Of a DNA stretch of 64,000 bases, positions 3,664 to 53,461 are shown piece by piece. Each line of letters begins with the position of its first letter. Within the stretch, counting starts at the first letter, position 1. The DNA is taken from positions 248,001 through 312,000 of IMG/VR virus record IMGVR_UViG_3300024239_000013. One strand, given 5' to 3'. Made by a program: the position numbers and the translations under genes. The notes under the pieces were generated by a model. The model saw only the letters and a program-made list of their open reading frames with translations, was not told the DNA's origin and made no database searches.

Positions 3664-3692
3664 ATTATACTATATATCATACATTGAGTTCC
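3664..3692 (-). promoter_or_regulatory. middle-type promoter GGAAC-N18-TATAAT with nested late motif (S1 operon)
   Basis: Exact 18-nt spacer; GATATATA at 3671-3678 lies inside the spacer. Confidence 0.65.
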
Positions 3693-3711
3693 TTTGTAAA
3701 GAAGTTTTTTA

Positions 3712-5148
3712 CTAAAAAACCAGAGGGACAAATCCTATCATTGATGTAGGTCCTTTAGCGGTAGGGATACCTCCACGGTATATAAATTTAAGTTCTAATA
3801 AATGCATAGCAAAGGAAAATGCTATAGCAGTCGAAACTAATTTACTAGCTATTGGAATCTCCCCGGTTTTTTTAAATCTTTTTCCGGTGTTAAAAGATCT
3901 TCTTAAATAGTTTGCGAGATTTTTCTGACTTCCATAATATACTGGAATATATTTACCTCCCTGAGGTTGTACTATAAGTGCAGGAAATACAGGGGGATTT
4001 GACGAAAGAGGTTGATCCAAGGTTGATTTCCAATAATCTATTATTCCCCTTGCCATAATATGATATGGGTCATTTTCTTCAACTGGATCTTCTTGGGGTT
4101 TTTCTGAATTGGCTATCTCTTCTATCCATTTAATTCTAAGATTTCTATATCTTTCATTTTCTTCATCATACTCTTTTCTTTTGGATTCTATAGATAAATT
4201 AAAAAATGTAGGGACACCTTCATAATCAAAAAGATTTGCATTAATATACGAATTTAATAAGGAAGATTCTGGATACTCATCAGACAAAACACTTATAACT
4301 TTTTTTATAGAAATTTCGTTGTTGGGAAATACTGTTTCCTTTATTGTGCTACTTAAATCATAATCAGACTTCCCTATGATTTTTTTAAAAAAATCAGAAT
4401 CATTAGAAGGTGAATATGAAAATTTTACGATAAAGTCTTTTGTTAAATAATCCGGTACTCTTTCTGGGTTGGTTGAATTATCTACCTGTAAAATTCTCTC
4501 CGTTATATTAATATCATCCAGATTCTTAGATACATCTATTAAATTTAGAGTAGATTCTTTGGATCCGCTTTCTTCTATAAGGACTCTAGCAATTTCTTTT
4601 AAAACATCAGAACCCCAATCTGAATATGTTCCATATTTTAAGGAATACAGCCATTCTATATAAGAAACTGAATTATATCTGGAAAATTGTGATATTAATT
4701 TTCTTGACAATTCCTTAATTGTTTGACTTCTATCTTTTGGGAATCCGGGGAACTGTGAAAAAAATTGTGAATATTTAAAAGGTTCGATGTCTTCCTCGTT
4801 TAGATCTGTCCAATCTCTGAAGTCTAGTTCTATTTGATCTATTGCTCCTTCAACACTAGTTTCCGGCAACTTTTCTTCTAGGTCTGCATACATCGGGTCG
4901 GATTCTTTCTCCTCTAGTGTTGGAGACGTTTCACTTTCTAACATTTTAAATGCCCTTGCAAAGGACGAAACTAAAATATCTGAAGATCCTTTTTTATGCA
5001 CATTACCAAAAGGCGACTGAGCCTTATCGACGGTTGCTTTTAAATATTGATCGCTTATAAAATTAGCAAAATCTTCAGAATCTTTTATATCTTGAGATTC
5101 TAATTTTTTACTAACGTTATCTATAAATGATTTCCAATCTGCTGGCAT
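3712..5148 (-). CDS. hypothetical protein (probable baseplate/virion)
   Basis: 478 aa ORF directly downstream of the spike gene. Confidence 0.45.
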   Translation of the reverse strand: MPADWKSFIDNVSKKLESQDIKDSEDFANFISDQYLKATVDKAQSPFGNVHKKGSSDILVSSFARAFKMLESETSPTLEEKESDPMYADLEEKLPETSVEGAIDQIELDFRDWTDLNEEDIEPFKYSQFFSQFPGFPKDRSQTIKELSRKLISQFSRYNSVSYIEWLYSLKYGTYSDWGSDVLKEIARVLIEESGSKESTLNLIDVSKNLDDINITERILQVDNSTNPERVPDYLTKDFIVKFSYSPSNDSDFFKKIIGKSDYDLSSTIKETVFPNNEISIKKVISVLSDEYPESSLLNSYINANLFDYEGVPTFFNLSIESKRKEYDEENERYRNLRIKWIEEIANSEKPQEDPVEENDPYHIMARGIIDYWKSTLDQPLSSNPPVFPALIVQPQGGKYIPVYYGSQKNLANYLRRSFNTGKRFKKTGEIPIASKLVSTAIAFSFAMHLLELKFIYRGGIPTAKGPTSMIGFVPLVF

Positions 5149-5151
5149 TTT

Positions 5152-5853
5152 TTATTTAGTTTTAGATACATTACTAAGATGTTCATTTTCTACCATTTTC
5201 TGTATAGGGATACCAGAAGGACCGACACCAGTTGGGTGAGTATGTGAATTAAAAAGTTTCATAAACTTATCACCTAGAATTATTTTTTCCATGGCTTTTT
5301 CACCAAGTTCTATATTTTCTGATTTAATTATAACCTTTTGCTTCCCACCATTTTTCTCCATTCTAATCTCGTCATCATTCATCTTAAGTTTAATTCTAAG
5401 TTTCTCTTTATCCTTTCCTGCATTTTGTGTATCTATCTGAATTGTTGCGTCGCCTAATTGGAATAATAATCCATTTTTTCTGGTGTATCCTATTTTTAAA
5501 ATCCCAGGTTCCGCCTCAGAATCATACACTAGGGCATGAGTTCCTTCATAAGAATTTTCTTGTTTCAGTTCATCCAAGAGTGCCTTGTCAAATTCCTTTA
5601 TGAAGTGATAAGACAATTTATAATAATTATTATGTTCGAAGTGAACTGCAACTATAGTACCTAAACGTGGTATAGATATGTTACCCCCTCCGTAATCCCC
5701 ACCAAAAGACATACCAGCAATTTGCTCAGCCCAAGGTAAATCTTCTACTGGAATACCATCAAAAAATCCAAAAACATCAATTTTAGCTCTCCCCTGATAA
5801 AGAGGATCTTTTATATCAACTATTCTACCTAGATATGTTTTTTCACTTGGCAT
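5152..5853 (-). CDS. baseplate spike, gp5 N-terminal OB-fold/gpV-like
   Basis: GRIVDIKDPLYQGRAKI..DLPWA, IPRLGTIVAVHF, C-terminal HTHPTGVGPSG apex motif; no lysozyme domain. Confidence 0.75.
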   Translation of the reverse strand: MPSEKTYLGRIVDIKDPLYQGRAKIDVFGFFDGIPVEDLPWAEQIAGMSFGGDYGGGNISIPRLGTIVAVHFEHNNYYKLSYHFIKEFDKALLDELKQENSYEGTHALVYDSEAEPGILKIGYTRKNGLLFQLGDATIQIDTQNAGKDKEKLRIKLKMNDDEIRMEKNGGKQKVIIKSENIELGEKAMEKIILGDKFMKLFNSHTHPTGVGPSGIPIQKMVENEHLSNVSKTK

Positions 5854-5858
5854 AATTA

Positions 5859-8159: not shown

Positions 8160-8196
8160 CTGAGTTCTATAATATTTACTATATTTATCCTACATT

Positions 8197-15677: not shown

Positions 15678-15759
15678 TTTATTTTTTTTATTCTATATAT
15701 CCAAAGTAATATTTTTAGATTTAAAATATATAGATAGAGCATTTTAAAAAAATTGTATC

Positions 15760-16482
15760 ATGAAGCAAATAAGTCCAGTATGGTTTATAAAGAAACCACT
15801 AGATCAAGAACACAAGGAATACGTACTTTTAGATTATCTTAAAAAATTAAGTAGAAAATTAGATAAAGAAAATTGTTATTCCATACTAAGAGAAATCTCC
15901 AACAAAATAAAAATAATAAACGAATTTAAAGAATCTAAGATTATAAGTGAATTTCTAATAAATAATCTTAAGAAGGAAGATAAAAAAATAGCTAAAGAGT
16001 TTATATATGATAATTTAGACGAATCTGATAAATTATTATTGGAAAAAATATTAGAAAGTTCTCTAGAAATACTATACGAATATTTAGGTATTTGTTTAGA
16101 TATGATAAAAGAAGAAGAATCTAAAATAAGGATATTTAAAATAGACCCACCATCAGGAGTAGAAGATAGACAAAAATCTGGTATAGTAATAGTTAGAAAT
16201 ATGATAACAGATAGAATTATACCATATTATTGGCAGGATTCGGTTACTCTAAAAACAAAGGAAGGAGATAAAGAAATTTTTATATTAAAAAAAATTCATA
16301 TAAAAAACCAAACATTCTCCTTAAATTATGAGTACATTTATCACGAGATATTGGAAAAATTCAGTAAAAGTTCCAAGAGATTGTCCCCTGATTTACACAT
16401 AATTGAAATATATGAGAATTTTGAAGAAGACTCTGGTATTTATAAATTAGCAAAAGAAAAATTTATAGAAATGTTATCATAA
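15760..16482 (+). CDS. hypothetical protein (only convincing plus-strand gene)
   Basis: 240 aa ORF filling the gap between minus genes; ends at a bidirectional terminator. Confidence 0.7.
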   Translation: MKQISPVWFIKKPLDQEHKEYVLLDYLKKLSRKLDKENCYSILREISNKIKIINEFKESKIISEFLINNLKKEDKKIAKEFIYDNLDESDKLLLEKILESSLEILYEYLGICLDMIKEEESKIRIFKIDPPSGVEDRQKSGIVIVRNMITDRIIPYYWQDSVTLKTKEGDKEIFILKKIHIKNQTFSLNYEYIYHEILEKFSKSSKRLSPDLHIIEIYENFEEDSGIYKLAKEKFIEMLS

Positions 16483-17493: not shown

Positions 17494-17546
17494 TTTTGGA
17501 TTTTATTTTAGTGTATATATCCAATAAAAATAAAAATATTCGAAGA

Positions 17547-19541: not shown

Positions 19542-19570
19542 TTTATATCCAAAAAATACTAAATGTTTTC
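19542..19570 (-). promoter_or_regulatory. middle-type promoter GAAAA-N18-TATAAA (kinase-asnB)
   Basis: Variant -35; 4 nt before ATG. Confidence 0.5.
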
Positions 19571-24438: not shown

Positions 24439-24502
24439 ATATAGACAATTATATTTTTCTATTCTATATATCCAATAAGATTTTTTATATGTTACCTAAA
24501 CT

Positions 24503-26239
24503 CTAATGAATTCCATATTTATAATTACCACAGTCCCATATTTTATAATATCCCATAGAATGCATAATATCATCAGCTTTTAAGTTTGGATCAAATCCAA
24601 GAGAAATCAATTTAGATTTTGTCCAGTTTAGTCGATTAGATTTTCTATCGTCAACAACCCAATAATATCCAGGAGTTGTTTTTCCGATATAAATAAATCC
24701 ACTTTTATAATAAGAAGTTTCTTTGTGATTGGGGGAGAAAGAAACATCGCAATAAGTAACTATAGATTTGGTAATATTATCTTTTATATACTTAATAATC
24801 CTAGAAACTCCACCAACTACAGTTGTATTAATAAGACTACAACTTCTGATTACCTCATATTCATATTTAGATTTTTTACTATCTATTAATTTTCTAGTTT
24901 TCGCTAAACTCATCAGAGAAACTAATACATTCTCGTAATATAATCCTATTATTATACTTGCTGGACAATATCCCTTGAGATGATTCTTCTGTGTAAAATG
25001 CTTATATTCACTTTTAGTGACCTGTTTTATTTCACACTTTCTGGCAAAAATTTTTCTTGAAATAGCACCAACTGCAGAAGATATCATAGACTTAACTATT
25101 TCTTTTTTATACCTCCAATCATCCTCCCATATATGATATAAACTAATACCTTTACTTGATAAAAATTCAGTTTTTTCTTGGTGATATTTAGAATTCTTAT
25201 ATATCTCAGAGTGCCAATAAAGTCCATTAAACTCAAAAGCAACGTTTATTTTTGGCAAATAGACGTCAACTTCAGAAAATTGTTTATTGTTTTTAAATAA
25301 ACTTCTATTATTAGATAATACCTCTCCAGGATATATTTCTTCTATATATTTTAGTAATTCCCTTTCCAAAACAGAAGATTTCATGTCTATTGGGTTACAA
25401 TATGGACATGGATCTATTCCATTTCTAAGTTTAGCATTTATAGTTGTTGAATGGAAACTAAAATCATGATTGCATCTTTCACAATTTAGATCAACCTTAG
25501 TTGTCGAATAACTAATCAATCCAATAGAATAAGAATCCAATTTACTAGAAAGTGTTTTTTGCTTAGTTATCGATGAAGACTCCGAAACTTTCTTAGCTAT
25601 TTCAGGATTTTTCATAGTATTCTCGTGTCCATACTTAAGAATATTGGTATTTCTTGACGACTCCGAATTAATAAAATCCAAGGTTCCATATTTTTCAATA
25701 CAGGTTTTAAGTCTTTTTTCAGAAATCTCCTTATTTTTTAAGGGAGAGTCTACACCATATTTTTCATTAAGGGTTTCCCTTATTTTTTCTTTTACTTCAT
25801 TGGATTTGAAATTATGATCAACCCCATATTTTGTTAACATAGTAGCTTCATATTTTTTTCTTTCTTCCGAACCTTTTTTGAAATACGAGTCTCCGTATTT
25901 TGACTTTATTGTATTTTTAAAACTATCGACTTTAATTTTTCTTTTACATTCAGAATTACCACATGTATTAAAGTAACCATCACTGAATCTATAGAATTTT
26001 TTAGGGTTTCCGCATATGCACTTTTCTACTAATTCCAAATTATTTATTATATGATATAATCTTTGTCCTATAGTAATGTCAAAATATACTTGATTTAGAA
26101 AATGTGTTACGTTCTCGATATCTGAAATTAATTCCTTATCGTTCCTTATTCTAGTGAATATGCCATTTAATGACATATTATTCGAAAGCTTATCGTTGAT
26201 GTCATTCGTTATTAATATCAGATTATTGCTAAGTTTCAT
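24503..26239 (-). mobile_element. free-standing homing endonuclease-like gene (KYG repeats, CxxC, PD-(D/E)xK/Vsr-like nuclease, GNAT/Mom-like C-terminus)
   Basis: EKYGV repeats, CERC/CPYC, EVDVYLP..AFEFNGLYWHS, HIWEDDW, ARKCEIK..YCD..IWDCG; sits downstream of the MCP terminator. Confidence 0.6.
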
Positions 26240-30085: not shown

Positions 30086-30093
30086 TATATATC
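30086..30093 (-). promoter_or_regulatory. late promoter of protease-capsid operon
   Basis: GATATATA 25 nt upstream of ATG 30060. Confidence 0.75.
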
Positions 30094-33572: not shown

Positions 33573-34274
33573 CTAGAAGCAGATTTTTTTCATGATAAGC
33601 ATTAATGTTCTAACGTCGGACTCACAATATCTTGATATCTTCAAGTGATCTTTGTCCAACCAATACGTTTCATTTACTTTGGATCCATCAAGATCTCCTT
33701 TAGGAGATTCTATATTTAGGGAGCAGGCTAATAAATCTAAGCTAAGATATTTTTGTTGAACCCAGCTACCAAATGAAAATATCTCAGAGGTATCAACATA
33801 AGGGATTTCCCATGGTTTTTTGTCCCATACTTGTAAATTTCCTGATGGATTTATTCCATTGAATATCATTCTTTTACCAAGACATGGAACATCAAATCCC
33901 TTAATATTATGACCACACAATTTCCAATTTTTGGCCATTGCATTATTGAATATCTTGTTGGTTTTGTTTAGTATATCAACCTCATCGTCACCATAAAAAG
34001 ATTTAAACGACATTTCACCATCCGCACTAAAAGATCCAAAACTAACACATACAACTTTTGAAAATTCGGGTTCTAGAGATCCTTTTTGTAAAAATATTTC
34101 ACTGTCAGATGCTTTTTCTAGCTCTATATTAGATCCTCTATAATAATTTGCTCTCTTAGTCCAAAGAAGAGCAAGTCTAGGATTTAAATATTCCATGGAT
34201 GAGTAGGATTCGTATGCGCATGCTGTCTCTACATCAAAATAAAGTAGATTTTGTATTACTTCTTTTTTAAACAT
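33573..34274 (-). CDS. PolB-related 3'-5' exonuclease (DEDD)
   Basis: YFDVET, GHNIKGFDVP, YCESDV. Confidence 0.8.
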   Translation of the reverse strand: MFKKEVIQNLLYFDVETACAYESYSSMEYLNPRLALLWTKRANYYRGSNIELEKASDSEIFLQKGSLEPEFSKVVCVSFGSFSADGEMSFKSFYGDDEVDILNKTNKIFNNAMAKNWKLCGHNIKGFDVPCLGKRMIFNGINPSGNLQVWDKKPWEIPYVDTSEIFSFGSWVQQKYLSLDLLACSLNIESPKGDLDGSKVNETYWLDKDHLKISRYCESDVRTLMLIMKKICF

Positions 34275-34291: not shown

Positions 34292-34299
34292 CAAATTTA
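34292..34299 (-). promoter_or_regulatory. Bacteroidota-type -7 element TAAATTTG (exonuclease)
   Basis: Matches TAnnTTTG; 17 nt before ATG. Confidence 0.55.
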
Positions 34300-34322: not shown

Positions 34323-35225
34323 TTATTTTTTTAAAATTTTATTTATTATAGTAGGAGGAAGAGCTTTATAGGTTTTCATATATTTAATATATGATAGTTC
34401 TCTTTTAGGTGAATCTATTATAACATCACAATCTAAACCAAAAGTAGGTATTCTTCTGCTTAAAAATTGTACTGGATTTGGTGAAATAGAAATTCCGTTT
34501 TCATTTATTTCCTCAGATTCGGAATGTATATAAAAAGGTTTTTGACCGGGTCTCCATGTGGAAGCAGCTAAGAATAGTGCTTCTCTTATCGAGAGTCCAC
34601 CGTCATTAAATTGATGAGGAAGAGATCTGAAACAAAGAGGAATTCCAGATTCATAATATATTCCAGAAAGAAGATCAGTGATTGAAAATAAACTTGGCTT
34701 ATCGTCATTTGTTACACATAACTTCTGTCTAGTTCTATCAGATAACAATGAAAGTCTCTCGCAAAACAATTTCATCGTTTGTTTTCTGTTGCCATAAGCA
34801 GATCCAATTCTAACTATTATAGATGGATAATTAATGCCGAGAAGGTCTAGTATAGAACTCAATCGGTTTAAAAATAATACACTATTTTCTTTTACCGATT
34901 CTATTTGACTTCCTAAGAAATGTTCCTTCCCTACAAAAAAACAAATCTTTAGAGAATTCTTGTTAATTAATGAATTTATAGAATTTATTCTTGACGATAT
35001 CTCAGGATCCTCTTCCTCTATAACATCCAGGAAAAAAGATTCATGAAAATCAATTTCACCAACATCTAAACAAACAATATTTGCATGGATCCGTGAATTT
35101 ATTACACAAACATCCAATATTAACGAAAGTATATCCTTATAAGAGGTTATTGTAAAGTCCCCCTTTATATGTTCTCTTGGAATTCCAAGATATGAAATAT
35201 TCGGTTGATTATTTCCAGATAACAT
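34323..35225 (-). CDS. uvsE: UV damage endonuclease UvsE-like (divergent)
   Basis: IGSAYGNRK, TNDDK, HQFNDG, AASTW..PFYIHSE. Confidence 0.6.
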   Translation of the reverse strand: MLSGNNQPNISYLGIPREHIKGDFTITSYKDILSLILDVCVINSRIHANIVCLDVGEIDFHESFFLDVIEEEDPEISSRINSINSLINKNSLKICFFVGKEHFLGSQIESVKENSVLFLNRLSSILDLLGINYPSIIVRIGSAYGNRKQTMKLFCERLSLLSDRTRQKLCVTNDDKPSLFSITDLLSGIYYESGIPLCFRSLPHQFNDGGLSIREALFLAASTWRPGQKPFYIHSESEEINENGISISPNPVQFLSRRIPTFGLDCDVIIDSPKRELSYIKYMKTYKALPPTIINKILKK

Positions 35226-35237: not shown

Positions 35238-35266
35238 ATTGTATCTGAATAACAGTAAATAGTTTC
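35238..35266 (-). promoter_or_regulatory. middle-type promoter GAAAC-N18-TACAAT (uvsE)
   Basis: Read directly. Confidence 0.65.
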
Positions 35267-36736: not shown

Positions 36737-37885
36737 TTAATTTAGAAAATTTTCAAAAGGATCAAATCCTTTAGGTTGGTATCCACTAGTTACCCATTCG
36801 GTTCCTTCTAATATTTTTATTCTATCTAGAGTTACTGATCTTTTTTCAATATTAGATCCTCTCTCAATCTCACTTAAACAACCTTTAGCTACAAAATCTG
36901 GTATCATACTTCGATCCAACCACATCAATTTAAAGTTCCTAATTATATTAGATTTAACTTTTACCCTGTTTTCTGTACTATCTACGCCTTTAGAAGTTCG
37001 AATTACAATACCACTAAGCCAATCCAGGAAATTCTCGCTATCTTCGGAATTTAACAAATAGCTAAAACTCTTATCAGACCATTCTGATTCTAGGAATGCA
37101 CCGTAAACAGCTTCTGCTTTTTTTTGTGTGAAATTGACAATCTTATTGTTATTGGTATAAGACCATACACTAGGTACAGAATCTCCTTTATCCCCGATTA
37201 AAATTTTATTAAATATGAAAGGTCTACTTTCAATTTCCTCTATCTGAACTTTCTTAAGAAAATCTTTAAACCTTTCCTTTTCTGGGGAAATTGCAGAAGC
37301 CATATTAAAAATATCAATAGACTCGTTTTTATCCAGCCAATCCTCTTTCCATCCTTTAGGAACCGAAATCACATTTTTCTTAGAGTTATTGTTCCATATC
37401 GTAGTCCACGATTTATTAGAAATTTTTGCTAATTGGTGCAAATCCTTATCACCAGTTATGATTATGCAATTTTCTCCTGCTTCGTTAAAGTGATCTGACC
37501 AGTACATAAGTAAATCGTCACCCTCTGCACCTTCGGTTTTAGAAAAAATGAATCCCATTTTTTCTAATTGGGCACCAAAAGATTGCATGAGATCAAAAAA
37601 TATAGTCCAGTCTACTGCTTCATCTTTTACTCTTCCTGATTTATACCCCCCGTCCTCTATTTCAATATCCTTCCTCCAGCTTCTACTATCAGAAGTAAAA
37701 ATTAATCTTCCCCCTTGTGGGATCATTTTCAGGGAGGAGCAAAGATCGGTAGAAACTTTTCGGATAAATGCAGCTTGTTCAGATTTATCTTTTAAGATTT
37801 TACCAGGATCTACATTTCCATACCCACCAAATATTCCAAAGGTTTTATGAAATATATAATTCCCGTCTATTAATATATTAACCAT
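36737..37885 (-). CDS. rnh: 5'-3' exonuclease / T4 RNase H-like
   Basis: LIDGN, DSRSWRK, EGDD, TGDKDLHQL, GDKGDSVP. Confidence 0.85.
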   Translation of the reverse strand: MVNILIDGNYIFHKTFGIFGGYGNVDPGKILKDKSEQAAFIRKVSTDLCSSLKMIPQGGRLIFTSDSRSWRKDIEIEDGGYKSGRVKDEAVDWTIFFDLMQSFGAQLEKMGFIFSKTEGAEGDDLLMYWSDHFNEAGENCIIITGDKDLHQLAKISNKSWTTIWNNNSKKNVISVPKGWKEDWLDKNESIDIFNMASAISPEKERFKDFLKKVQIEEIESRPFIFNKILIGDKGDSVPSVWSYTNNNKIVNFTQKKAEAVYGAFLESEWSDKSFSYLLNSEDSENFLDWLSGIVIRTSKGVDSTENRVKVKSNIIRNFKLMWLDRSMIPDFVAKGCLSEIERGSNIEKRSVTLDRIKILEGTEWVTSGYQPKGFDPFENFLN

Positions 37886-37893
37886 TTCTTTTA

Positions 37894-38415
37894 TTATATT
37901 TTATATTTATTAACATCTGCCCATTCAACATCTAATTTAAAATTAGGGTCGGTTATTTTATAATCGAAATCAGTAAAGTTTTCAAAATCCTTTTTATCTG
38001 ATTCCAATCTTCTATTTACAGTATCAGCATCTTTCCTATCGGATAATCTTTTTTTTCTTATCTCCTCGTCTATATCAAAATAAACTATAAAAGACTCCTT
38101 TCTATCTTCAGGTTTTAATCTCATGATCCCGGATGGTGTCATTATAAATAAATTGGATTTAGAAAATTCTTCAATAGTTGTTCCGTATAACCATCCATTA
38201 AAAATTACATATTCATAAAATAAATCTTTAGCTATAAAATGATGGTTAGCAGAGTCCATAGATATAAAATGATAATCCTTCCCATCAACCTCACCAATTC
38301 TAGGAGGTCTTGTGGTATGGGATATACAATAGACAAATCCAGATTCCTCCAGAATTTCTCTAGCATAATCTTTTCCTGAAGCTCCTTTACCCACTAATAT
38401 AATTCTTTTCATCAA
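37894..38415 (-). CDS. gmk: guanylate kinase
   Basis: GKGASGKD, SHTTRPPRIGEVDGKDYHF, WLYGT. Confidence 0.88.
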   Translation of the reverse strand: MMKRIILVGKGASGKDYAREILEESGFVYCISHTTRPPRIGEVDGKDYHFISMDSANHHFIAKDLFYEYVIFNGWLYGTTIEEFSKSNLFIMTPSGIMRLKPEDRKESFIVYFDIDEEIRKKRLSDRKDADTVNRRLESDKKDFENFTDFDYKITDPNFKLDVEWADVNKYKI

Positions 38416-39356
38416 TCTATCATTTTTTGTATCTGATAAACTAAGGATAAAAGGGAAACCATCGGATCTATTACCTGTGTTCTTTGAGCTTGATGTTCGG
38501 CCACTAGTATTATAACACCAGGTATTATTTTTTTATGCTCAGGCTTATTGTCGATTATCCATTTTATGAATTCATCTCCTAATGCAGACATTACATCATC
38601 TACCTTACCTTGATATTCACCAACTATAGATTGATAATTCTTGATAGGATCCTTCGAATTTAATATGAGATCGTAAAGAGTCTCGTAAGACCAGCCTAGT
38701 TCCTTCATTTTATTCTGATCTACGGTTTTAACTCCTTCGATAGTCCAACTTTGAATTTTATTTAAAGCTGATCTAAAATCAGGATAATAATTTCTCTGGA
38801 ATTCTAAAAGTGATTCGCTATCGATAGAAATATTCAATTTGCTAAGAATTAAACTAATTCTTTTATTCCATTCTTCTTTTAGTTGGTTTTCTTCTTCAGT
38901 TGTTGCTGGAGTAAAATCTATAACTTCGAATCTACTTTTTATAGCATCTGGGATTTTGTTGATATAGTTACATGTGGATATGAATCTGGTATTTCCAGCA
39001 AATTTCTCGATAGTTCCTCTTAAAGCTTTATGAAACTGATCTGAAACCCCATCAAACTCATCCAATATTACCACTTTTTTTGAAGACTTACCATCCAATA
39101 CAGATATTGTTGAGCAGAAATCATTTATCTTAACTCTAAGGGTTTCTACTGAACTCTCATCTGATCCATTTATGAATATATGGGGATAAGGCGCAGCTAA
39201 AATTTTAGCCAGAGTTGTCTTCCCACACCCCGGAGGTCCACTAAGAAGTACATTTTGATTTAATCCATTTTCAAACACTCTTGAAATTCTTTGAGGCAAT
39301 ATCATATGTCTCAATTCTTTCGGTCTAAGCTTTTCTGTTAATAATTCTTGTATCAT
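38412..39356 (-). CDS. gp44: clamp loader AAA+ subunit, gp44/RFC-like
   Basis: EKLRP, GPPGCGKTT, ILDEFD, SRF, PDFR. Confidence 0.88.
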   Translation of the reverse strand: MIQELLTEKLRPKELRHMILPQRISRVFENGLNQNVLLSGPPGCGKTTLAKILAAPYPHIFINGSDESSVETLRVKINDFCSTISVLDGKSSKKVVILDEFDGVSDQFHKALRGTIEKFAGNTRFISTCNYINKIPDAIKSRFEVIDFTPATTEEENQLKEEWNKRISLILSKLNISIDSESLLEFQRNYYPDFRSALNKIQSWTIEGVKTVDQNKMKELGWSYETLYDLILNSKDPIKNYQSIVGEYQGKVDDVMSALGDEFIKWIIDNKPEHKKIIPGVIILVAEHQAQRTQVIDPMVSLLSLVYQIQKMID

Positions 39357-39360
39357 ACTA

Positions 39361-39389
39361 ATTCTAGTGAATAAATTAATTCTTGTTTC
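39361..39389 (-). promoter_or_regulatory. middle-type promoter GAAAC-N18-TAGAAT (clamp loader operon)
   Basis: Fills the 33-nt intergenic gap. Confidence 0.7.
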
Positions 39390-40721
39390 TTAAAATTTAT
39401 TAGAAAAGTCATCTGAAGTTGTCTTGTCGGATCTTATCTCTATAAATCTTGGTAAAAATAAAGATCTGTTTCCGTGTTTATCCTCTATAGTTACGTTATA
39501 TTGGACAGCAGCAATTTTTCCAATATGAGAATCTGGATCTTCACTTAGTGTTTTTAAATCATTGTCAGTAAATCCGGCTCCGACTTTAACATTAAGAGTC
39601 CCACTTGAATCTGTTAAGATAAATCCACCAATAAATCCTTCTCTCTTTCCCTCTCCTGGATACCATCCAGTTATAAGAAGATCGCAATCATTAACCTCTT
39701 TAAATTTTATCCAAGACTTAGATCTTTTACATTCATAAACAACATCAGCTTTACAAATAACTCCCTCCCCACCTTCATCGACAATCTTTTTATAAATAGA
39801 CGAAACTTCACTGGCATCTTTAAGCTCCCACATTTTAGCTAATTTAACCGGGGATTCTTCTGAAATCGAGGATAAAACTTTTTCTAACGTATCTCTTCTT
39901 ATTTTGTAATTAATAACTCCAGAGCCAGTATCTAGAGTAGATGCTTCCTCCAGATCAAAAATATTAAAAAGAAGTCCCTTTTCTATAGATGAATCAACTT
40001 TACCCTTAAGTATCTGAGTAACCTTGCCACTGACTGATTTTCTATTCAAATCCGTTAATTCGCCATCGAAAAACCAATCACCCTTCAATCCGCTATTTAT
40101 CATACACGTTTTAAGATCGAAAGTTATTTTAGGAAAACAAGAGGAATCAAGTTCATTAAATGCTCTAGTAAAGTAGGAAAATTCACCATTCTTATAAAGT
40201 GCTATTACTCTCACTCCATCATATTTCTCCTCACAATATACTTTTCCCCATTTTTCTATGTTATCGTGATCATCTGTTGCCAGCATAAGAGAAGGATCGG
40301 GGATTAATTCTCTCTTAAGTGCTTTATTGATAAGTTTTGCACCTATACCTATGTTCATTCTTTTGGTTAATATTTTCATAAGTACAGTTCTGAGTTCCAA
40401 ATCCTCAGCATCATCTTCAGATATTCTCTGTGAGATGATATTTTGAGCTCTACCTCTAAGTATATCGTTTGCTGCAGGGGCTTTTTTAAGCTCTTCTACA
40501 AGGGCTTTAAATTCATCCCAATGATTAGGATTACTTTCACTTAAAGATTCGTTAAAAGATATCTTATGAAGTTTTGTGGTAATAAATGGGTTATAACAGA
40601 CGTCTAGAATATAAGAGAATTTGTCTGTTAAGTTTTCTTCGATTAATTTTTGTTTTGCCTTTTGAGATCCCTCTCCTGTAAGATTTTCTAGATTTTTAAA
40701 AATTCTTAATTCTTGTATCAT
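39390..40721 (-). CDS. ATP-dependent DNA ligase
   Basis: EKYDGVR, FDGEL, EGVICK, KRSKSWIKFK, SLFLPRF. Confidence 0.92.
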   Translation of the reverse strand: MIQELRIFKNLENLTGEGSQKAKQKLIEENLTDKFSYILDVCYNPFITTKLHKISFNESLSESNPNHWDEFKALVEELKKAPAANDILRGRAQNIISQRISEDDAEDLELRTVLMKILTKRMNIGIGAKLINKALKRELIPDPSLMLATDDHDNIEKWGKVYCEEKYDGVRVIALYKNGEFSYFTRAFNELDSSCFPKITFDLKTCMINSGLKGDWFFDGELTDLNRKSVSGKVTQILKGKVDSSIEKGLLFNIFDLEEASTLDTGSGVINYKIRRDTLEKVLSSISEESPVKLAKMWELKDASEVSSIYKKIVDEGGEGVICKADVVYECKRSKSWIKFKEVNDCDLLITGWYPGEGKREGFIGGFILTDSSGTLNVKVGAGFTDNDLKTLSEDPDSHIGKIAAVQYNVTIEDKHGNRSLFLPRFIEIRSDKTTSDDFSNKF

Positions 40722-40738
40722 ATTGATTTATTTTTTCA

Positions 40739-40746
40739 CAAATATA
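40739..40746 (-). promoter_or_regulatory. Bacteroidota-type -7 element TATATTTG (ligase)
   Basis: Matches TAnnTTTG; 17 nt before ATG. Confidence 0.55.
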
Positions 40747-40770
40747 ATACAAAAATTCGAACTGAAAAAA

Positions 40771-41742
40771 TTATAAATTGAAATATTTACTATTATAGAC
40801 ATCTTCTATCCCGACCGAAACCGCACCTACACTAGAGCATGCGATAGATCCAGCTATATTACATAATTTTAAAGATTCTTTTATATCCAACCCAGAAGAA
40901 AAACATAAAGATATCATAGCGGTAACGGTATCACCAGCACCCGAAACGTCGGAAATTTTCACAGGATATGAAGGAGAGTGATATGATTCATTAGCAGTGA
41001 TGAAAATTACCCCATTTTCTGATAAGGTGACTAGTATAGATTCTATACCTAATTTAGATATAATATTCCTTCCCTCATAAACTATGGAATCGAAATCATT
41101 GGGACTCAATTTTTTATTGATTAAACTACAAAACTCTAAGAAATTGGGTTTAATCAAAGTACAACCGCTATATGAATCAAAATTTTTTAATTTAGGGTCT
41201 ACTAATACTGGCTTATTTTTTTCCTTGCAAATTTTTATAATTCCCTTTATAAGTACAGAGGTTAATAATCCTTTATTATAGTCCTCCATAATAACACAAT
41301 CATAAAAATCTATAACGGATTCTATTTTTGATAATATAATAGATTCTAAATTACTATCAATATCAATTATATCCTCATTATCAACTCTTAATAATTGATG
41401 AGAATTTGAAATGTATCTTGATTTAGTAGTTGTCTTTATTCCCGACCTTTTTATAAGAAGGCTGAGATCAGATTTTTCTGAAACCAAACTTTCTACCTTA
41501 TCTCCATTAAGATCATTTCCTATAACAGAAATAATATCGCTATATCCACCTAAAGAATGAATGTTTAGAAAAACATTACCTGCCCCTCCTAAATAGTAAT
41601 TTTCAGATTTATTTAATAATACCGGTACTGGAGCTTCTGGGGATATTCTAGATACGATTCCATTTACATAATGGTCTAGCATGATATCTCCAATGACCAA
41701 TATTTTAAGTCTGGAAAAAATATCCCTGATGTCTAGATTCAT
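40771..41742 (-). CDS. rfaE: heptose-7-phosphate kinase (RfaE/HldE kinase domain, PfkB family)
   Basis: GDIMLDHY..RISPEAPVPV, GGAGNV, DYNKG, VDPK, DVSGAGDT. Confidence 0.85.
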   Translation of the reverse strand: MNLDIRDIFSRLKILVIGDIMLDHYVNGIVSRISPEAPVPVLLNKSENYYLGGAGNVFLNIHSLGGYSDIISVIGNDLNGDKVESLVSEKSDLSLLIKRSGIKTTTKSRYISNSHQLLRVDNEDIIDIDSNLESIILSKIESVIDFYDCVIMEDYNKGLLTSVLIKGIIKICKEKNKPVLVDPKLKNFDSYSGCTLIKPNFLEFCSLINKKLSPNDFDSIVYEGRNIISKLGIESILVTLSENGVIFITANESYHSPSYPVKISDVSGAGDTVTAMISLCFSSGLDIKESLKLCNIAGSIACSSVGAVSVGIEDVYNSKYFNL

Positions 41743-45036: not shown

Positions 45037-45069
45037 TTAAATAATACTTTATTAATTTTATCGAATTTC

Positions 45070-45672
45070 TTAAATTAATTTCGATCTATATTCATTATAT
45101 ATCCCCTGTATGGATAACCCCTCTATCATATTAAAACTAAGATAAGGAATTTTTGGCCAATCCTCCATGGAAATAACCTTAACATTTTTTATGAATTTAT
45201 ATTTAAATCCAAAATAGGAATTTAAATATCCAGTACCTTTAAGAATATTCTTTAGCACAGGGTCCTTTAAATTCACTGGAACTTTGGTCGATCCTCTTTC
45301 GTATGAATTCTTATTAGCTAATAATTGTTCATAGAAATTATCATATATTCTTTCTATTATATCAACTCTTATTATATTCGGTACAGTTATTAAATCTATA
45401 CCTTTTATTACAGTTCCAGATTCTAATGTGTTGAAAACATCGGTACAAATAACAAGAGGCATTCGATCTACGAAAGGCCTTTTTTTGCTAATTTCAGAAT
45501 CCGTTAAATACCTAAAAGAGTAAATCTCTCCTGGGATGAATGGAGGAATGAAAGATATATCTGGTGAATCGTTCTTAAAATATTTACTTAAGAACAGATC
45601 ATTAGTTGAAGTGAATATGTTTCCCGAACTAGTTTCATCTTCTTTGTATTTAAGAACTAAATCTTTATACAT
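45070..45672 (-). CDS. DNA end protector gp2-like (tentative)
   Basis: PGEIYSFRY..DRMPLV pattern; adjacent to gp4. Confidence 0.5.
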   Translation of the reverse strand: MYKDLVLKYKEDETSSGNIFTSTNDLFLSKYFKNDSPDISFIPPFIPGEIYSFRYLTDSEISKKRPFVDRMPLVICTDVFNTLESGTVIKGIDLITVPNIIRVDIIERIYDNFYEQLLANKNSYERGSTKVPVNLKDPVLKNILKGTGYLNSYFGFKYKFIKNVKVISMEDWPKIPYLSFNMIEGLSIQGIYNEYRSKLI

Positions 45673-46163: not shown

Positions 46164-46523
46164 TTAAATATTATATGAATTATCATCACCAGTGATATAG
46201 CTAAATGGTATAGTTTTAGGATTTTTAGGGGGATGTAATTTTTTCCATCCCTTAGCAAATCCATTTTTAGCAATCTGTGTAAAATAAGCAAATGGATTAT
46301 TAGACTTTTCAGGATTGAATCGATTCCAATATTTACAGAGATCTTCCATAGCAAAGGCCATACAATCTTCTTTATCTTCTGGATCTTTATATGACATTTT
46401 CTTAGCTATACCGTTTATCATTAAGGTAAACATTTCTATAGTTTCCGGTGTCAGCTTACCGGCTTTCTTTGATTCTATTACAGCAAGCATAAGCTCACTA
46501 TTTTTAACATATTCTTTTGCCAT
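46164..46523 (-). CDS. gp55: late-transcription sigma factor, T4 gp55-like (short)
   Basis: YVKNSEL, FNPEKSNNPFAYFTQIAKN; start reassigned to ATG 46523 because the longer ORF crosses a terminator and promoter. Confidence 0.8.
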   Translation of the reverse strand: MAKEYVKNSELMLAVIESKKAGKLTPETIEMFTLMINGIAKKMSYKDPEDKEDCMAFAMEDLCKYWNRFNPEKSNNPFAYFTQIAKNGFAKGWKKLHPPKNPKTIPFSYITGDDNSYNI

Positions 46524-46549: not shown

Positions 46550-46578
46550 ATTCTAGTATAAAAAATGGTAAATATTTC
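46550..46578 (-). promoter_or_regulatory. middle-type promoter GAAAT-N18-TAGAAT (late sigma gene)
   Basis: Between terminator and ATG 46523. Confidence 0.65.
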
Positions 46579-46580
46579 AT

Positions 46581-46617
46581 AAAAAAAGAATGTAGCTTTT
46601 TGGTTACATTCTTTTTT
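46581..46617 (-). terminator. intrinsic terminator
   Basis: aaaaaagaatgta ... tacattctttttt inverted repeat. Confidence 0.75.
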
Positions 46618-49163: not shown

Positions 49164-49247
49164 TTTTTACTTTTTTTTTACTGTTTATATATCCAACTAA
49201 GGACAAGAAACTTTTACTATATATTTTACGATATAATCTTTTTTTTC

Positions 49248-49742: not shown

Positions 49743-49743
49743 T

Positions 49744-50418: not shown

Positions 50419-50435
50419 TTTTACTTGTGATATTT

Positions 50436-51140: not shown

Positions 51141-51154
51141 TATTATCGATTCTG

Positions 51155-51457: not shown

Positions 51458-51502
51458 AATATTAATTTTTATTTTTTTATATATCCAAAAACAAACTCCA
51501 CA

Positions 51503-51535
51503 AAAAAACCAGTAATAAAAATCACTGGTTTTTTT
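51503..51535 (-). terminator. intrinsic terminator
   Basis: aaaaaaaccagt ... actggttttttt. Confidence 0.75.
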
Positions 51536-51554
51536 CATTTTTTTTATGTTTATA

Positions 51555-52112
51555 TTAACCTAGAGTAACTCCTTGCATAGCTGCAGCTAGTTGTTTTTCT
51601 AAATCTTTTACTAAAGCTGCATCTTCTTTTGCATCGGATAATGCTTGATCGAATGCTTTAAACAGTCTAAGAAAATCTTCAGCGCTCTTTAAACCAACAC
51701 CTTTGGATTTAGAAAGGAAATAGTGACTTGCTTCCAGAGGTAAAGCACTCATATAAATAGTATTGTCTTTAATTCCTTCTTTTCTGATCTTTTTAATCTG
51801 TTTATTAACTTCAACAACACCTAAAGCTTCAGTTGAATTCCATTCAGCCTTTTCCTGCATGAATTTTTCATATTCAGAGAAAAGATCTTGATTACAAGAA
51901 ATAGCATAAAGCTTTGTCTTAATCTCTTCTTTTTTAGCAGAAATTTCTTTATGTAATTGATCCACTTTTTCTTGATCAATTCCTATAGGTGAATCCAAAA
52001 TTGAATCTTGAGGAACAGTTGGACCATTAGTATTAAATTTGATTACATTCGATGCTAGAGGTTCGGTATTTCCAATCTCTATTTTTTGTGAATTCTTCTT
52101 AGTTGATGACAT
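51555..52112 (-). CDS. hypothetical protein
   Basis: 185 aa with own GAAAC-N18-TAGAAC motif and terminator. Confidence 0.6.
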   Translation of the reverse strand: MSSTKKNSQKIEIGNTEPLASNVIKFNTNGPTVPQDSILDSPIGIDQEKVDQLHKEISAKKEEIKTKLYAISCNQDLFSEYEKFMQEKAEWNSTEALGVVEVNKQIKKIRKEGIKDNTIYMSALPLEASHYFLSKSKGVGLKSAEDFLRLFKAFDQALSDAKEDAALVKDLEKQLAAAMQGVTLG

Positions 52113-52129
52113 ATTTTTTTAATTTTATA

Positions 52130-52158
52130 GTTCTAGTTATTTTTATTTGTTTTGTTTC
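52130..52158 (-). promoter_or_regulatory. middle-type promoter GAAAC-N18-TAGAAC
   Basis: Read directly. Confidence 0.65.
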
Positions 52159-52977
52159 TTATCTTATATCAAAAATATCAAAATTAGTTCTATTTTGTTC
52201 GAGATATGCTCTCAGAGGCTCTCTTAGATCTTTTGCCGGATATATTTTGGGATTTGAATTTGGTCCTATGTGACAAAGAAATCCACTTTCGGTTTCTATT
52301 CCAATTTCCTCCTCCAATATTAATCTATATAGACTTATTTGTATAGAATATAAGTTGTGCTCATTCTCCCATAAATGAGTAAAAGGTCTTAATAATCTTT
52401 TATACCTTCCTTCAGGATGATCATCATGCTTAAATACACCATTTGTTTTCCAGTCTCCTATAAGTAGAAATAATTTTTCTCTTTTCTGGTCCCAAAATAA
52501 AAATGGTTGGTCGACAGTTCCAGCAAGTCTCCACCTTCTAGAGAATATTTTGAGCTCAGAAGGAAGTGGTACCAATACATGAAATTTTCTATTGTAGAGT
52601 TCAATAAATTTATTTACTCTCAATGAATATTCATCATCAGGATCTATAGAAGGAATCTCTGGATTTTCACCACTCCAAAAATCCTCTATAAATTTATGAA
52701 CCTTCGTACCAAGTTCATTTGCTACATTTGCTTTATTTTTCCATTCATCTAATATAACCGAAACGTCGACTCCTCTTTCTGCTGCTTTTCTCTTAGACCA
52801 ATATTCTCTATTAAAAGGGGCCTTAAAATTTTTAATGTATGTTGTTACGGAATCGAATAATATACCATCATATCTATATGTATGCGTGGCTTCATCAAAA
52901 ACAAATTTAGGATCCTTCGAAAAAATAGCCAATTTGCTTTCTATATCTTTTTTTGTGCTTTCTATGTATTCCTTCAT
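52159..52977 (-). CDS. PD-(D/E)xK exonuclease
   Basis: SVTT, GTKVH, SE, AGTVD, DWKTN, YSIQISLY. Confidence 0.75.
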   Translation of the reverse strand: MKEYIESTKKDIESKLAIFSKDPKFVFDEATHTYRYDGILFDSVTTYIKNFKAPFNREYWSKRKAAERGVDVSVILDEWKNKANVANELGTKVHKFIEDFWSGENPEIPSIDPDDEYSLRVNKFIELYNRKFHVLVPLPSELKIFSRRWRLAGTVDQPFLFWDQKREKLFLLIGDWKTNGVFKHDDHPEGRYKRLLRPFTHLWENEHNLYSIQISLYRLILEEEIGIETESGFLCHIGPNSNPKIYPAKDLREPLRAYLEQNRTNFDIFDIR

Positions 52978-53420
52978 TAAACTAAATTAATAATTTTTAA
53001 GAGCCATTCCCACTTAATAGCAACAAAAACTATAAGTGAAACCTCAACAATAAATCTAAGAATCCACAATAGACTAATATATCTAAATAAGAATTGATAT
53101 ACTACTAAATATGATTCTTCATCGGTTCCTTTTACTGGCTCTATCCACATCGTAAGTAACTCCTCTAAATTAAGAGATTTGAAATACTCGTTAGTAGGCT
53201 TAATTTCACTTATAACAAAAGAAGGTCTAGCATCTTTAGGAAGATCTACAGAAAGAGTAACCTGTGGGGGAAGATTAACGACAGTGTATATTCTATTTAA
53301 ATAATCTCTTCTTAAATTTCTTCTTGCCCATATAGGAGAATCTGTCTCCTCTTTTTTTATGATTTTCACATATTCAAGATAGAGTAAAAATTCTTTTATA
53401 ACCTTAAAAATTCTAAACAT
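52977..53420 (-). CDS. hypothetical protein with C-terminal TM helix
   Basis: Hydrophobic C-terminus. Confidence 0.55.
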   Translation of the reverse strand: MFRIFKVIKEFLLYLEYVKIIKKEETDSPIWARRNLRRDYLNRIYTVVNLPPQVTLSVDLPKDARPSFVISEIKPTNEYFKSLNLEELLTMWIEPVKGTDEESYLVVYQFLFRYISLLWILRFIVEVSLIVFVAIKWEWLLKIINLV

Positions 53421-53432
53421 GATGGTTTATTT

Positions 53433-53461
53433 TTTATATCATCGTAAATCTTTATTGTTTC
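53433..53461 (-). promoter_or_regulatory. middle-type promoter GAAAC-N18-TATAAA
   Basis: -35 lies in the last codons of the ECF sigma gene. Confidence 0.6.

What the first reader, a model, noticed from the sequence alone, without database searches (positions are those of the whole stretch)
3664..53461. Middle promoter class G(A/G)AA(C)-N18-TAnAA(T) with invariant 18-nt spacer
Seven copies with an exact 18-nt spacer: 3664 (S1), 19542 (kinase/asnB), 35238 (uvsE), 39361 (clamp loader/gmk/rnh), 46550 (gp55), 52130 and 53433. All sit directly upstream of non-structural genes. At 39361 and 19542 the ATG is only 4 nt past the -10, which suggests leaderless mRNAs.
Basis: partly seen in the sequence, partly recalled or inferred. 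Interest (0 to 1): 0.7.

Follow-up and report, generated by a model that had tools for sequence, protein, structure and literature searches.

The report
Phage sigma-dependent middle promoter class
A two-box promoter (GAAAC, 18 bases, TAnAAT) sits in front of replication, repair and late-sigma genes of a 319-kb phage of Bacteroidota and is conserved in its relatives; it is most likely read by the phage's own ECF-type sigma factor, the middle step of a three-step transcription cascade.

Summary
The motif is real, and it lies on the minus strand. Site 19542 is doubtful. The loose pattern shared by all seven is not specific (41 window matches against about 27 expected).

The support comes from three tests:
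- **Spacer:** counts in intergenic DNA peak sharply at an 18-base spacer in this genome and in two related genomes.
- **Orientation:** all of about 23 genome-wide sites point at the gene downstream.
- **Conservation:** orthologous promoters in relatives keep both boxes and the spacing while the spacer sequence diverges.

The spacer is mostly 18 bases, with 17 tolerated, so it is not invariant.

The genome has three promoter classes:
- a host-type Bacteroidota class (TAnnTTTG box);
- this class, upstream of DNA polymerase, clamp loader, UvdE, DNA-modification genes and the gp55-like sigma gene;
- GATATATA, upstream of structural genes.

An ECF-type sigma gene (53452-54060) lies behind a host-type promoter. 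It is conserved in every relative that carries the motif, whereas a third, RpoS-like sigma is not. The best reading is therefore a cascade: host sigma, then phage ECF sigma, then gp55-like sigma.

Timing, the sigma assignment and leaderless starts are inferred. No transcription start data could be obtained. I class this as a new member of a known kind.

The parts
39361..39389 (-). Class M promoter of the clamp-loader operon (clamp loader 38412-39356, guanylate kinase, 5'-3' exonuclease): GAAAC-N18-TAGAAT. The -10 box ends 4 bases before the ATG at 39356.
   Evidence: Both boxes and the spacing are conserved upstream of clamp-loader orthologues although the spacer diverges. RNA-library contigs of a related strain diverge from the window exactly at 39389.
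35238..35266 (-). Class M promoter of the UvdE-like UV endonuclease gene (34323-35225): GAAAC-N18-TACAAT, 12 bases to the ATG.
   Evidence: The orthologue in G001 has GGAAC-N18-TACAAA with a different spacer.
52130..52158 (-). Class M promoter of gene 51555-52112 (185 aa, no family match): GAAAC-N18-TAGAAC, 17 bases to the ATG.
   Evidence: The orthologue in G001 has GAAAC-N18-TAGAAA.
53433..53461 (-). Class M promoter of genes 52977-53420 (147 aa, unknown) and 52159-52977 (exonuclease): GAAAC-N18-TATAAA. The -35 box overlaps the last codons of the ECF sigma gene.
   Evidence: G001 keeps GAAAC-N18-TATAAA but not the GATATAAA string, so the class M reading is the conserved one.
46550..46578 (-). 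Class M promoter of the gp55-like late sigma gene: GAAAT-N18-TAGAAT, 26 bases to the ATG at 46523.
   Evidence: In 44 distinct relatives, 33 have GAAAT-N18-TA[AG][AG]A, 3 have N17, none has N19 and 8 have no match.
46579..46617 (-). Intrinsic-terminator-like hairpin and U run that ends directly at the -35 box of the 46550 promoter.
   Evidence: Fold energy -11 kcal/mol, z = -5.5, no shuffle folds as well. The hairpin and T run are also seen in relatives.
3664..3692 (-). Class M promoter (GGAAC-N18-TATAAT) of the S1-domain protein gene 2462-3628. Its spacer holds a late-class box, GATATATA, at 3671-3678, so it may be a dual middle/late promoter.
   Evidence: Both the class M boxes and the GATATATA box are conserved in G001.
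19542..19570 (-). Doubtful member: GAAAA-N18-TATAAA, 4 bases before the ATG at 19537. It also reads TTGGATATAAA, a one-mismatch late-class box. It lies about 60 bases downstream of a terminator-like hairpin, so some promoter is expected here.
   Evidence: Matrix score 11.8 against 19-27 for the others. The G001 orthologue has a host-type TATATTTGC box instead.
53452..54060 (-). ECF-type sigma factor gene (202 aa; sigma-70 regions 2 and 4 only). It is the proposed reader of class M.
   Evidence: Pfam r2 and r4_2. TIGR02937 scores 69.6 bits against a cut-off of 42.9; the best subfamily is the Bacteroides-type TIGR02985. The best solved relative is SigW. Orthologues are present in G001, G002, G003 and Lak phages.
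54690..54697 (-). Host-type (class E) -7 box TACATTTG, with a T run upstream, in front of the dCMP deaminase (54064-54669) and ECF sigma operon.
   Evidence: The box is conserved in G001. In G003 a TATATTTG box lies directly upstream of the sigma gene. The TAnnTTTG consensus of Bacteroidota sigma-A is taken from PMC9723704.
46164..46523 (-). gp55-like sigma gene (119 aa from the conserved ATG; region 2 only). It is the proposed reader of the late GATATATA class.
62195..62202 (-). Example of the late-class box GATATATA, upstream of the tail sheath gene 58812-62165. Others lie at 30086-30093 (head protease), 49186-49193, 24465-24472, 17514-17521, 15694-15701 and 45096-45103 (upstream of the portal gene).
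   Evidence: The window has 17 copies on the minus strand and none on the plus strand.

Best explanation
The sites are promoters of a phage-specific class, consensus (c)GAAAC(w)a-N18-TA(t/g)AA(t). I propose that host RNA polymerase core reads them when it carries the phage's own ECF-type sigma factor (gene 53452-54060).

The proposed cascade has three steps:
1. The sigma gene lies behind a host-type Bacteroidota promoter (TAnnTTTG box), so it would be made early.
2. The sigma's region 4 would bind the AAC-type -35 box and its region 2 the -10 box, at a nearly fixed distance. This would switch on replication, repair, nucleotide and DNA-modification genes, and also the gene of a gp55-like sigma.
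3. The gp55-like sigma would then read the single-box GATATATA promoters of the structural genes.

Shown here:
- the motif, its enrichment, its orientation and its spacer preference;
- its conservation in relatives;
- the three promoter classes and their gene content;
- the presence and conservation of the sigma genes.

Inferred:
- which sigma reads which class;
- the timing;
- where transcripts start, including a possible leaderless clamp-loader mRNA.
For: **Motif reality**
- Intergenic matches peak at spacer 18 in three genomes.
- Intergenic shuffles give 21 against 3.25, 16 against 1.6 and 9 against 0.6.
- All intergenic hits are sense to the gene downstream.

**Conservation**
- Twelve orthologous pairs between G000 and G001 keep both boxes at N18 while the middle of the spacer is only about 50% identical.
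- Upstream of the gp55-like gene, 36 of 44 distinct relatives carry the motif.
- Upstream of the clamp loader, 29 of 67 distinct relatives carry it, against 0 of 76 inside the gene and 3 of 76 on the reverse complement.

**Gene content**
- Genes downstream are DNA polymerase B, clamp loader, UvdE, glycosyl- and methyltransferases, a Vsr/Mom-like protein and the gp55-like sigma. None is structural.
- GATATATA precedes the protease, the sheath and the portal.

**Sigma assignment**
- The 202-aa protein is ECF-type, with regions 2 and 4. It therefore fits a two-box promoter with rigid spacing.
- Its recognition helix aligns with those of SigW and RpoE.
- It is conserved in G001, G002, G003 and Lak phages. 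The motif is enriched in G001, G003, Lak-B5 and LR756500.
- The motif is not enriched in PTm1 and PAU, where tblastn found no orthologue.
- The sigma gene lies behind a host-type box in G000, G001 and G003.
- No AsiA or MotA homologue was found.
Against: - There are no transcription start or time-course data. The RNA-library contigs were uninformative, and one contig spans the promoter.
- The -10 box TAnAAT is of housekeeping type. It is not the CGT-type box usual for ECF sigmas, including those of Flavobacterium (PMC9723704).
- No conserved class M promoter lies upstream of the sigma gene itself, so the autoregulation typical of ECF sigmas is not seen.
- G002 has the sigma but shows only weak enrichment of the motif.
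- The genome also encodes an RpoS/RpoD-like sigma, which by family would be expected to read TAnAAT-type boxes.
- Co-occurrence across a single clade is confounded by shared ancestry.
Confidence: 0.6

Rival explanations
1. Sigma appropriation. The sites are read by host sigma-A holoenzyme remodelled by phage proteins, with GAAAC as the binding site of a phage activator (as the MotA box is in T4) and TAnAAT as a weak host-type -10 box.
For: T4-like phages use this logic for middle genes (PMC2988021, listed). The -10 box shares its TA start with the host TAnnTTTG box. Most genes of the genome have no family match, so an unrecognised activator could be present.
Against: No AsiA or MotA homologue was found. 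The -10 box lacks the TTTG that defines Bacteroidota sigma-A promoters. A conserved two-domain sigma is present and needs a promoter class.
Confidence: 0.12
2. A host ECF sigma of the same Bacteroidota family reads the sites, and the phage sigma is a captured copy that reinforces or replaces it.
For: The phage sigma is closest to Bacteroides/Flavobacteria-type ECF models (TIGR02985, NF058625). The GAAAC -35 box is a generic ECF-type box (my own knowledge of SigW and RpoE promoters; not tested here).
Against: The ECF promoters mapped in Flavobacterium carry a CGT -10 box. The phage conserves its own copy across relatives as far as 28% identity, which argues that the copy is needed.
Confidence: 0.1
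3. The 305-aa RpoS/RpoD-like sigma (genome 6573-7490, outside the window) reads the sites.
For: Its family reads TATAAT-type -10 boxes (general knowledge). A GAAAC-N18-TATAGA site lies 46 bases upstream of its own gene.
Against: The gene is absent from G001 (99% complete), G002 and G003, yet the promoter class is present in G001 and G003.
Confidence: 0.05
4. The motif is a by-product of A+T-rich intergenic composition and is not a functional element.
For: The loose pattern is common in the window (41 matches against 27 expected). The strict pattern is only 4 against about 1.
Against: The counts peak at spacer 18, intergenic DNA is enriched over its own shuffles, the hits are strictly sense-oriented, and the boxes are conserved across diverged spacers in many relatives.
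Confidence: 0.02

Closest known systems
Phage phiEco32 gp36, a phage-encoded distant sigma homologue that directs host RNA polymerase to middle and late promoters
   Same: A phage sigma with an N-terminal -10-reading domain and a C-terminal -35-reading domain replaces the host sigma after the early phase. Early genes use the host sigma (PMC12276001).
   Different: phiEco32 promoters are defined by AATGTA centred at -11.5 and need the cofactor gp79. One sigma serves both the middle and late classes. Here there are two boxes with an 18-base spacer, a separate gp55-like sigma for late genes and no known cofactor. The host phylum also differs.
Bacillus phage SPO1 sigma cascade (host sigma-A, then gp28 for middle genes, then gp33/34 for late genes)
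   Same: A three-step cascade in which a phage sigma made early reads the middle promoters, and the middle genes include the late sigma (abstract of PMC13401047; details from my own knowledge).
   Different: The sigma families and promoter sequences differ. Here the late step uses a T4 gp55-type, region-2-only sigma.
Phage T4 middle promoters (MotA box plus sigma-70 -10 box, with AsiA)
   Same: The position in the programme is the same: replication and nucleotide-metabolism genes of a T4-like gene set (clamp loader, gp55). Both have a two-element architecture with a TA...T-type -10 box.
   Different: There is no MotA or AsiA homologue. The upstream box is GAAAC at -35 distance, not a MotA box at -30. 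A dedicated sigma is available instead of an appropriated host sigma.
Cellular ECF sigma promoters (B. subtilis SigW TGAAAC-N16-CGTA; E. coli RpoE GGAACTT-N16-TCAAA; consensus sequences quoted from memory)
   Same: The -35 box contains AAC and the spacing is rigid. Counted from AAC, the distance to the -10 region is the same to within 2 bases.
   Different: The -10 box is TAnAA(T), with no CGT. There is no adjacent anti-sigma gene and no autoregulatory promoter.

Membership tests
ECF (group 4) sigma-70 family: the 202-aa protein | Only regions 2 and 4, about 200 aa, and a score above the family cut-off | tested here: met
   Pfam Sigma70_r2 and Sigma70_r4_2 only. TIGR02937 scores 69.6 bits against a cut-off of 42.9. 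The best solved relatives are SigW and RpoE.
ECF (group 4) sigma-70 family: the 202-aa protein | Membership of a defined ECF subfamily (equivalog or subfamily cut-off) | tested here: not met
   The best subfamily, TIGR02985, scores 80 bits against a cut-off of 126.4; NF058625 scores 71.5 against 130. It is a divergent phage lineage.
ECF-type regulon architecture | The sigma gene is preceded by its own promoter (autoregulation) and followed by an anti-sigma gene | tested here: not met
   The gene lies in an operon behind a host-type TACATTTG box. The GAAAT-N18-TAAAAT site at 54080-54108 is inside the deaminase gene and is not conserved in G001. The gene downstream (147 aa) has no family match.
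ECF-type promoter | -35 box with an AAC core | tested here: met
   G[AG]AA[CT], mostly GAAAC, in G000, G001 and G003.
ECF-type promoter | -10 box with a CGT core | tested here: not met
   The -10 box is TA(t/g/a)AA(t). A CGT box is reported for Flavobacterium ECF promoters.
ECF-type promoter | Narrow spacer tolerance | tested here: met
   There is a peak at N18 with a shoulder at N17 and background elsewhere. At the gp55-like locus the counts are 33 N18, 3 N17 and 0 N19.
T4-type middle promoter (sigma appropriation) | MotA and AsiA proteins encoded | tested here: not met
   No match to PF09114 or PF09010 in the whole genome at E <= 1.
Bacteroidota sigma-A promoter | TAnnTTTG box at -12 to -5 | tested here: not met
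   Class M -10 regions lack TTTG. A separate class of about 35 sites carries the box. The consensus is taken from PMC9723704.
T4-type late promoter (gp55-dependent) | A single extended -10 box with no -35 element, upstream of structural genes | tested here: not met
   Class M has a conserved -35 box and non-structural genes downstream. The GATATATA class fits this description instead.
Leaderless mRNA (39361 and 19542) | The transcript starts at the A of the start codon | not testable with these tools
   Only assembled contigs of RNA libraries were available, and they gave no 5' ends. The geometry is 4 bases from the -10 box to the ATG, and 4-6 bases in relatives. A separate group of late boxes also lies 4-6 bases from an ATG.
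Middle temporal class | Expression after early genes and before late genes, dependent on an early phage protein | not testable with these tools
   There is no cultured host and no time course. The timing is inferred from gene content and from the promoter types in front of the two sigma genes.

The most novel reading that the evidence does not exclude
A whole clade of huge Bacteroidota phages (relatives of the Lak megaphages and the freshwater 'moraphage'-like genomes) shares an ancient three-sigma programme. In it, an ECF-type sigma has been retooled to read a hybrid promoter with an ECF-type -35 box (GAAAC) and a housekeeping-type -10 box (TAnAAT). Some middle and late promoters are placed 4-6 bases from the ATG so that they make leaderless mRNAs in a host phylum that does not use Shine-Dalgarno sequences.
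Probability: 0.4. Interest if true: 0.6.

Novelty: new member of a known kind. Interest (0 to 1): 0.45.

Why it matters
Huge phages of Bacteroidota are known almost only from metagenomes, and their gene expression programme is unknown. Papers on these lineages list sigma genes but give no promoters.

A three-class promoter map has several uses:
- It gives a way to assign temporal classes to hundreds of genes of unknown function.
- It helps to call operon boundaries and true start codons.
- It supports prediction of the host phylum, because the early class carries the Bacteroidota TAnnTTTG box.

An ECF-type sigma paired with a TAnAAT -10 box would also be an unusual specificity. It could serve as an orthogonal sigma/promoter pair for Bacteroidota genetics.

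The regulatory logic itself, a phage sigma cascade, is well known from SPO1, T4 and phiEco32.

Tried and rejected
- **Near-identity search in GenBank phages:** no match.
- **Second read-laying run:** it gave only assembled contigs of four RNA libraries. There were no pile-ups of ends. One contig spans the 39361 promoter, and others break at 39389 because the strain differs upstream. This is no evidence on transcription starts.
- **Sigma-DNA complex prediction:** not folded by the tool, so it is no evidence either way.
- **Autoregulatory site upstream of the sigma gene (54080-54108):** rejected, because it is inside a coding region and is not conserved in G001.
- **GAAAT-N18-TATTAT, 4 bases before the portal ATG (45041-45069):** rejected as a class member. 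Its -35 box is absent in G001, and a conserved GATATATA box lies at 45096-45103.
- **In-gene strict match at 34898-34926:** treated as chance, with a low flank score.
set aside because the gene is absent from relatives that keep the motif.
- **GATATAAA as evidence that 19542 belongs to the late class:** weak, because this one-mismatch string is common in coding DNA.


Full report
**Setting**

The window is bases 248001-312000 of a single 319,334-base virus record with 31% G+C. About 86% of the open reading frames lie on the minus strand. The nearest named relatives are the Lak megaphages of Prevotella, at about 40% identity for the clamp loader, and uncultured huge phages. IMG/VR holds many closer relatives. 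A 2025 paper describes a freshwater lineage of 200-307 kb phages of Bacteroidota, sister to the Lak phages, with a sigma factor in its core genes. The passages found by my search for 'sigma' and 'promoter' hold no promoter analysis (PMC12619734).

**The observation**

All seven sites exist at the stated coordinates and are read on the minus strand. The pattern that all seven share (GRAA-N19-TAnAA) is not specific: it has 41 matches in the window against 26.8 +/- 5.6 in shuffles. The strict form, GRAAC-N18-TAnAAT, has 4 matches against 0.97. The window counts alone would therefore not carry the claim.

**Is it more than chance?**

Three independent tests say yes.

- *Spacer scan.* With the two boxes fixed and the spacer varied from 12 to 24, matches in coding DNA stay flat. 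Matches in intergenic DNA peak at 18. For GRAAC..TAnAAT the count is 7 against 0-2 at other spacers. For the relaxed G[AG]AA[CT]..TAnAA[ACT] it is 23 against a mean of 5 at spacers other than 17-19. The same peak appears in two related complete genomes: G001 (clamp loader 86% identical) and G003 (44%).
- *Shuffles.* Shuffling each intergenic region gives 3.25 +/- 1.75 relaxed matches against 21 observed. G001 gives 1.6 against 16. In G003 the pattern GAAAC-N18-TAnAA gives 0.6 against 9.
- *Orientation.* All 23 intergenic N18 matches point at the gene downstream. This includes three on the plus strand that sit in front of plus-strand genes.

An unseeded dyad count over all upstream regions also recovers GAAA-N17-ACTA, 8 observed against 0.67 expected.

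**Conservation**

- For twelve promoters, the orthologous upstream region in G001 has the same two boxes at N18, while the middle of the spacer is only about 50% identical. Because the sites were located by the pattern, the telling fact is that the pattern is found at the same place in both genomes.
- Upstream of the gp55-like gene, 44 distinct relatives give 33 N18, 3 N17, 0 N19 and 8 without a match. The -35 box is GAAAT in all but one of the 36 matches, and in most of them it directly follows a run of T, the end of a terminator-like hairpin where that is in view.
- Upstream of the clamp loader, 67 distinct relatives reaching down to about 32% identity give 16 N18, 9 N17 and 4 N19. The controls give 0 of 76 inside the gene and 3 of 76 on the reverse complement.
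- G003 has its own flavour of the motif, GAAACT-N15-CATATAA, in many copies on its coding strand.
- Lak-B5 and LR756500 show 15 against 3 and 14 against 3 relative to the reversed-pattern control.
- Two T4-like jumbo phages outside the clade show no excess: Tenacibaculum phage PTm1 (8 against 12) and Sphingomonas phage PAU (5 against 13).

**The seven sites one by one**

- Sites 35238, 39361, 46550, 52130 and 53433 are conserved class members. They score 19-27 on the class matrix.
- Site 3664 is also conserved, but its spacer contains a conserved late-class box, GATATATA, at 3671-3678. It may serve two classes.
- Site 19542 is doubtful. Its -35 box is GAAAA and its score is 11.8. The G001 orthologue has a host-type TATATTTGC box instead. 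The site also reads TTGGATATAAA, one mismatch from the late box, although that string is common and weak as evidence. A terminator-like hairpin lies about 60 bases upstream, so some promoter is expected there.

**Three promoter classes**

Printing all upstream regions shows two further classes.

- *Class E.* About 35 sites carry a T run, TATC and TAnATTTG(c). They are concentrated in the left 180 kb. Three lie in the window, in front of the exonuclease 33573-34274, the ligase 39390-40721 and the deaminase-sigma operon. TAnnTTTG at -12 to -5 is the sigma-A box of Bacteroidota (PMC9723704).
- *Class L.* This is (TTG)GATATATA, with 41 copies in upstream regions against 12 in all coding DNA. The window has 17 copies on the minus strand and none on the plus strand. 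It lies in front of the head protease, tail sheath, portal and other genes, and is conserved in G001 and partly in G003.
- *Class M.* Its downstream genes are DNA polymerase B, clamp loader, guanylate kinase, 5'-3' exonuclease, UvdE, an exonuclease, glycosyl- and methyltransferases, a DegT-like aminotransferase, a Vsr/Mom-like protein, an S1-domain protein and the gp55-like sigma. None is a recognised structural gene. However, a head-closure gene follows the gp55-like gene with no evident terminator.

**Who reads class M?**

The genome encodes three sigma-70 family proteins.

- *The 202-aa protein (53452-54060).* It has regions 2 and 4 only and passes the ECF superfamily cut-off. It is closest to Bacteroides/Flavobacteria-type ECF models, and SigW is its best solved relative. 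Its region 4 recognition helix aligns with those of SigW and RpoE.
- *The gp55-like protein.* It has region 2 only, which fits a single-box promoter such as class L.
- *The 305-aa RpoS/RpoD-like protein.* It lies at genome 6573-7490.

The ECF-type and gp55-like genes are present in G001, G002 and G003. The RpoS-like gene is in none of them, although G001 and G003 have class M.

The ECF-type gene lies behind a class E box in G000 and G001 (as the second gene of the deaminase operon) and directly behind one in G003. The gp55-like gene lies behind a class M promoter across the clade. No AsiA or MotA homologue is present.

The simplest reading is a cascade: host sigma-A, then phage ECF-type sigma, then gp55-like sigma. 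This is inference. It rests on architecture, gene order and co-occurrence within one clade.

Three facts count against it:
- The -10 box is of housekeeping type rather than the CGT type of ECF promoters.
- The sigma gene has no conserved class M promoter of its own.
- G002 has the sigma but shows only weak enrichment of the motif.

**Leaderless starts**

At 39361 the -10 box ends 4 bases before a start codon whose reading MIQE is conserved. In close relatives the distance is 4-6 bases.

Late boxes show two groups of distances to the ATG: 4-6 bases (7 cases) and 16-31 bases (most cases). This suggests that a short-distance arrangement is used on purpose.

If TA sits at -12/-11, as in the host box, a 4-base gap would put the usual start 2 bases past the A of the ATG. 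A leaderless AUG therefore needs a short discriminator. In Flavobacterium only 5.5% of mRNAs are leaderless. The idea is open, and I put it near even odds for the clamp loader.

**Expression data**

Public runs that hold near-identical sequence include four metatranscriptomes, but only as assembled contigs. Laid on 37000-41200 they show scattered pieces and no pile-ups of ends. One contig crosses the promoter. Two contigs from groundwater libraries match up to 39389, the first base of the -35 box, and then continue with unrelated sequence. That is a strain difference whose breakpoint coincides with the promoter edge. None of this bears on transcription starts.

**Comparison with known systems**

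- The logic matches phage sigma cascades: SPO1 (gp28, then gp33/34) and phiEco32 gp36, whose middle and late promoters carry AATGTA at -11.5 and need gp79 (PMC12276001).
- The position in the programme matches T4 middle promoters, but the T4 proteins are absent here.
- The -35 box and the rigid spacing match cellular ECF promoters. The -10 box does not.

I file this as a new member of a known kind: a phage-sigma-dependent promoter class, newly defined for a clade of uncultured huge phages.

Noticed in passing
window 62195-62202, 49186-49193, 45096-45103, 30086-30093, 24465-24472, 17514-17521, 15694-15701, 158-165 (all minus strand): Late-class promoter box (TTG)GATATATA with no -35 element. 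The window has 17 copies on the minus strand and none on the plus strand. It precedes the sheath, head protease, portal and other genes, and is conserved in G001 and partly in G003. It is probably read by the gp55-like sigma.
   Followed up: partly
window 54690-54697, 40739-40746, 34292-34299 (minus strand); about 35 sites genome-wide, mostly at genome 13-181 kb: Early-class promoters with a T run, TATC and a TAnATTTG(c) box, the Bacteroidota sigma-A -7 box. This points to a host in that phylum.
   Followed up: partly
L080:6573-7490 (+), genome coordinates, outside the window: A third sigma gene, RpoS/RpoD-like (305 aa; regions 2, 3 and 4). It is absent from G001, G002 and G003. A GAAAC-N18-TATAGA site lies 46 bases upstream of its ATG.
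   Followed up: partly
window 39389/39390: Contigs from two groundwater RNA libraries (X17, X19) match the window up to the first base of the -35 box and then continue with unrelated sequence. The strain rearrangement breakpoint lies exactly at the promoter edge.
   Followed up: no
genome-wide; window 19542-19549 is one case: Seven late-type boxes lie only 4-6 bases from an ATG, while most lie 16-31 bases away. The distances form two groups, which hints at leaderless late mRNAs.
   Followed up: no
window 24503-26239 (-): A 578-aa protein matches homing/HNH endonuclease families (phrog_3339, E 6e-103). It sits among structural-region genes behind a terminator-like hairpin and a TATAAT-like box.
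   Followed up: no
L082 region, genome 38681-47470 (minus-strand reading, inside a plus-strand gene block): Four near-identical copies of a roughly 50-base stretch beginning GAACTTTCATTTA turned up in the pattern scan. This is a repeated element or a family of paralogous gene ends.
   Followed up: no
runs X3, X4, X7, X9, X10: Small 2014 runs labelled with single organisms (A-D) hold 55-63% of the sampled words of this phage region. This is unexpected for a sequence otherwise seen in groundwater and wastewater metagenomes.
   Followed up: no
W02 (LR756500.1) 108604-119042 and L097 (G003, upstream of the sigma gene): In more distant relatives, several GAAAC-N18-TATAAT sites carry a TATATTTG host-type box inside the spacer. 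These may be overlapping early and middle promoters.
   Followed up: no
window 15678-15759: An 82-base divergent intergenic region lies between the only plus-strand gene of the window (15760-16482) and a minus-strand gene that has a late box.
   Followed up: no
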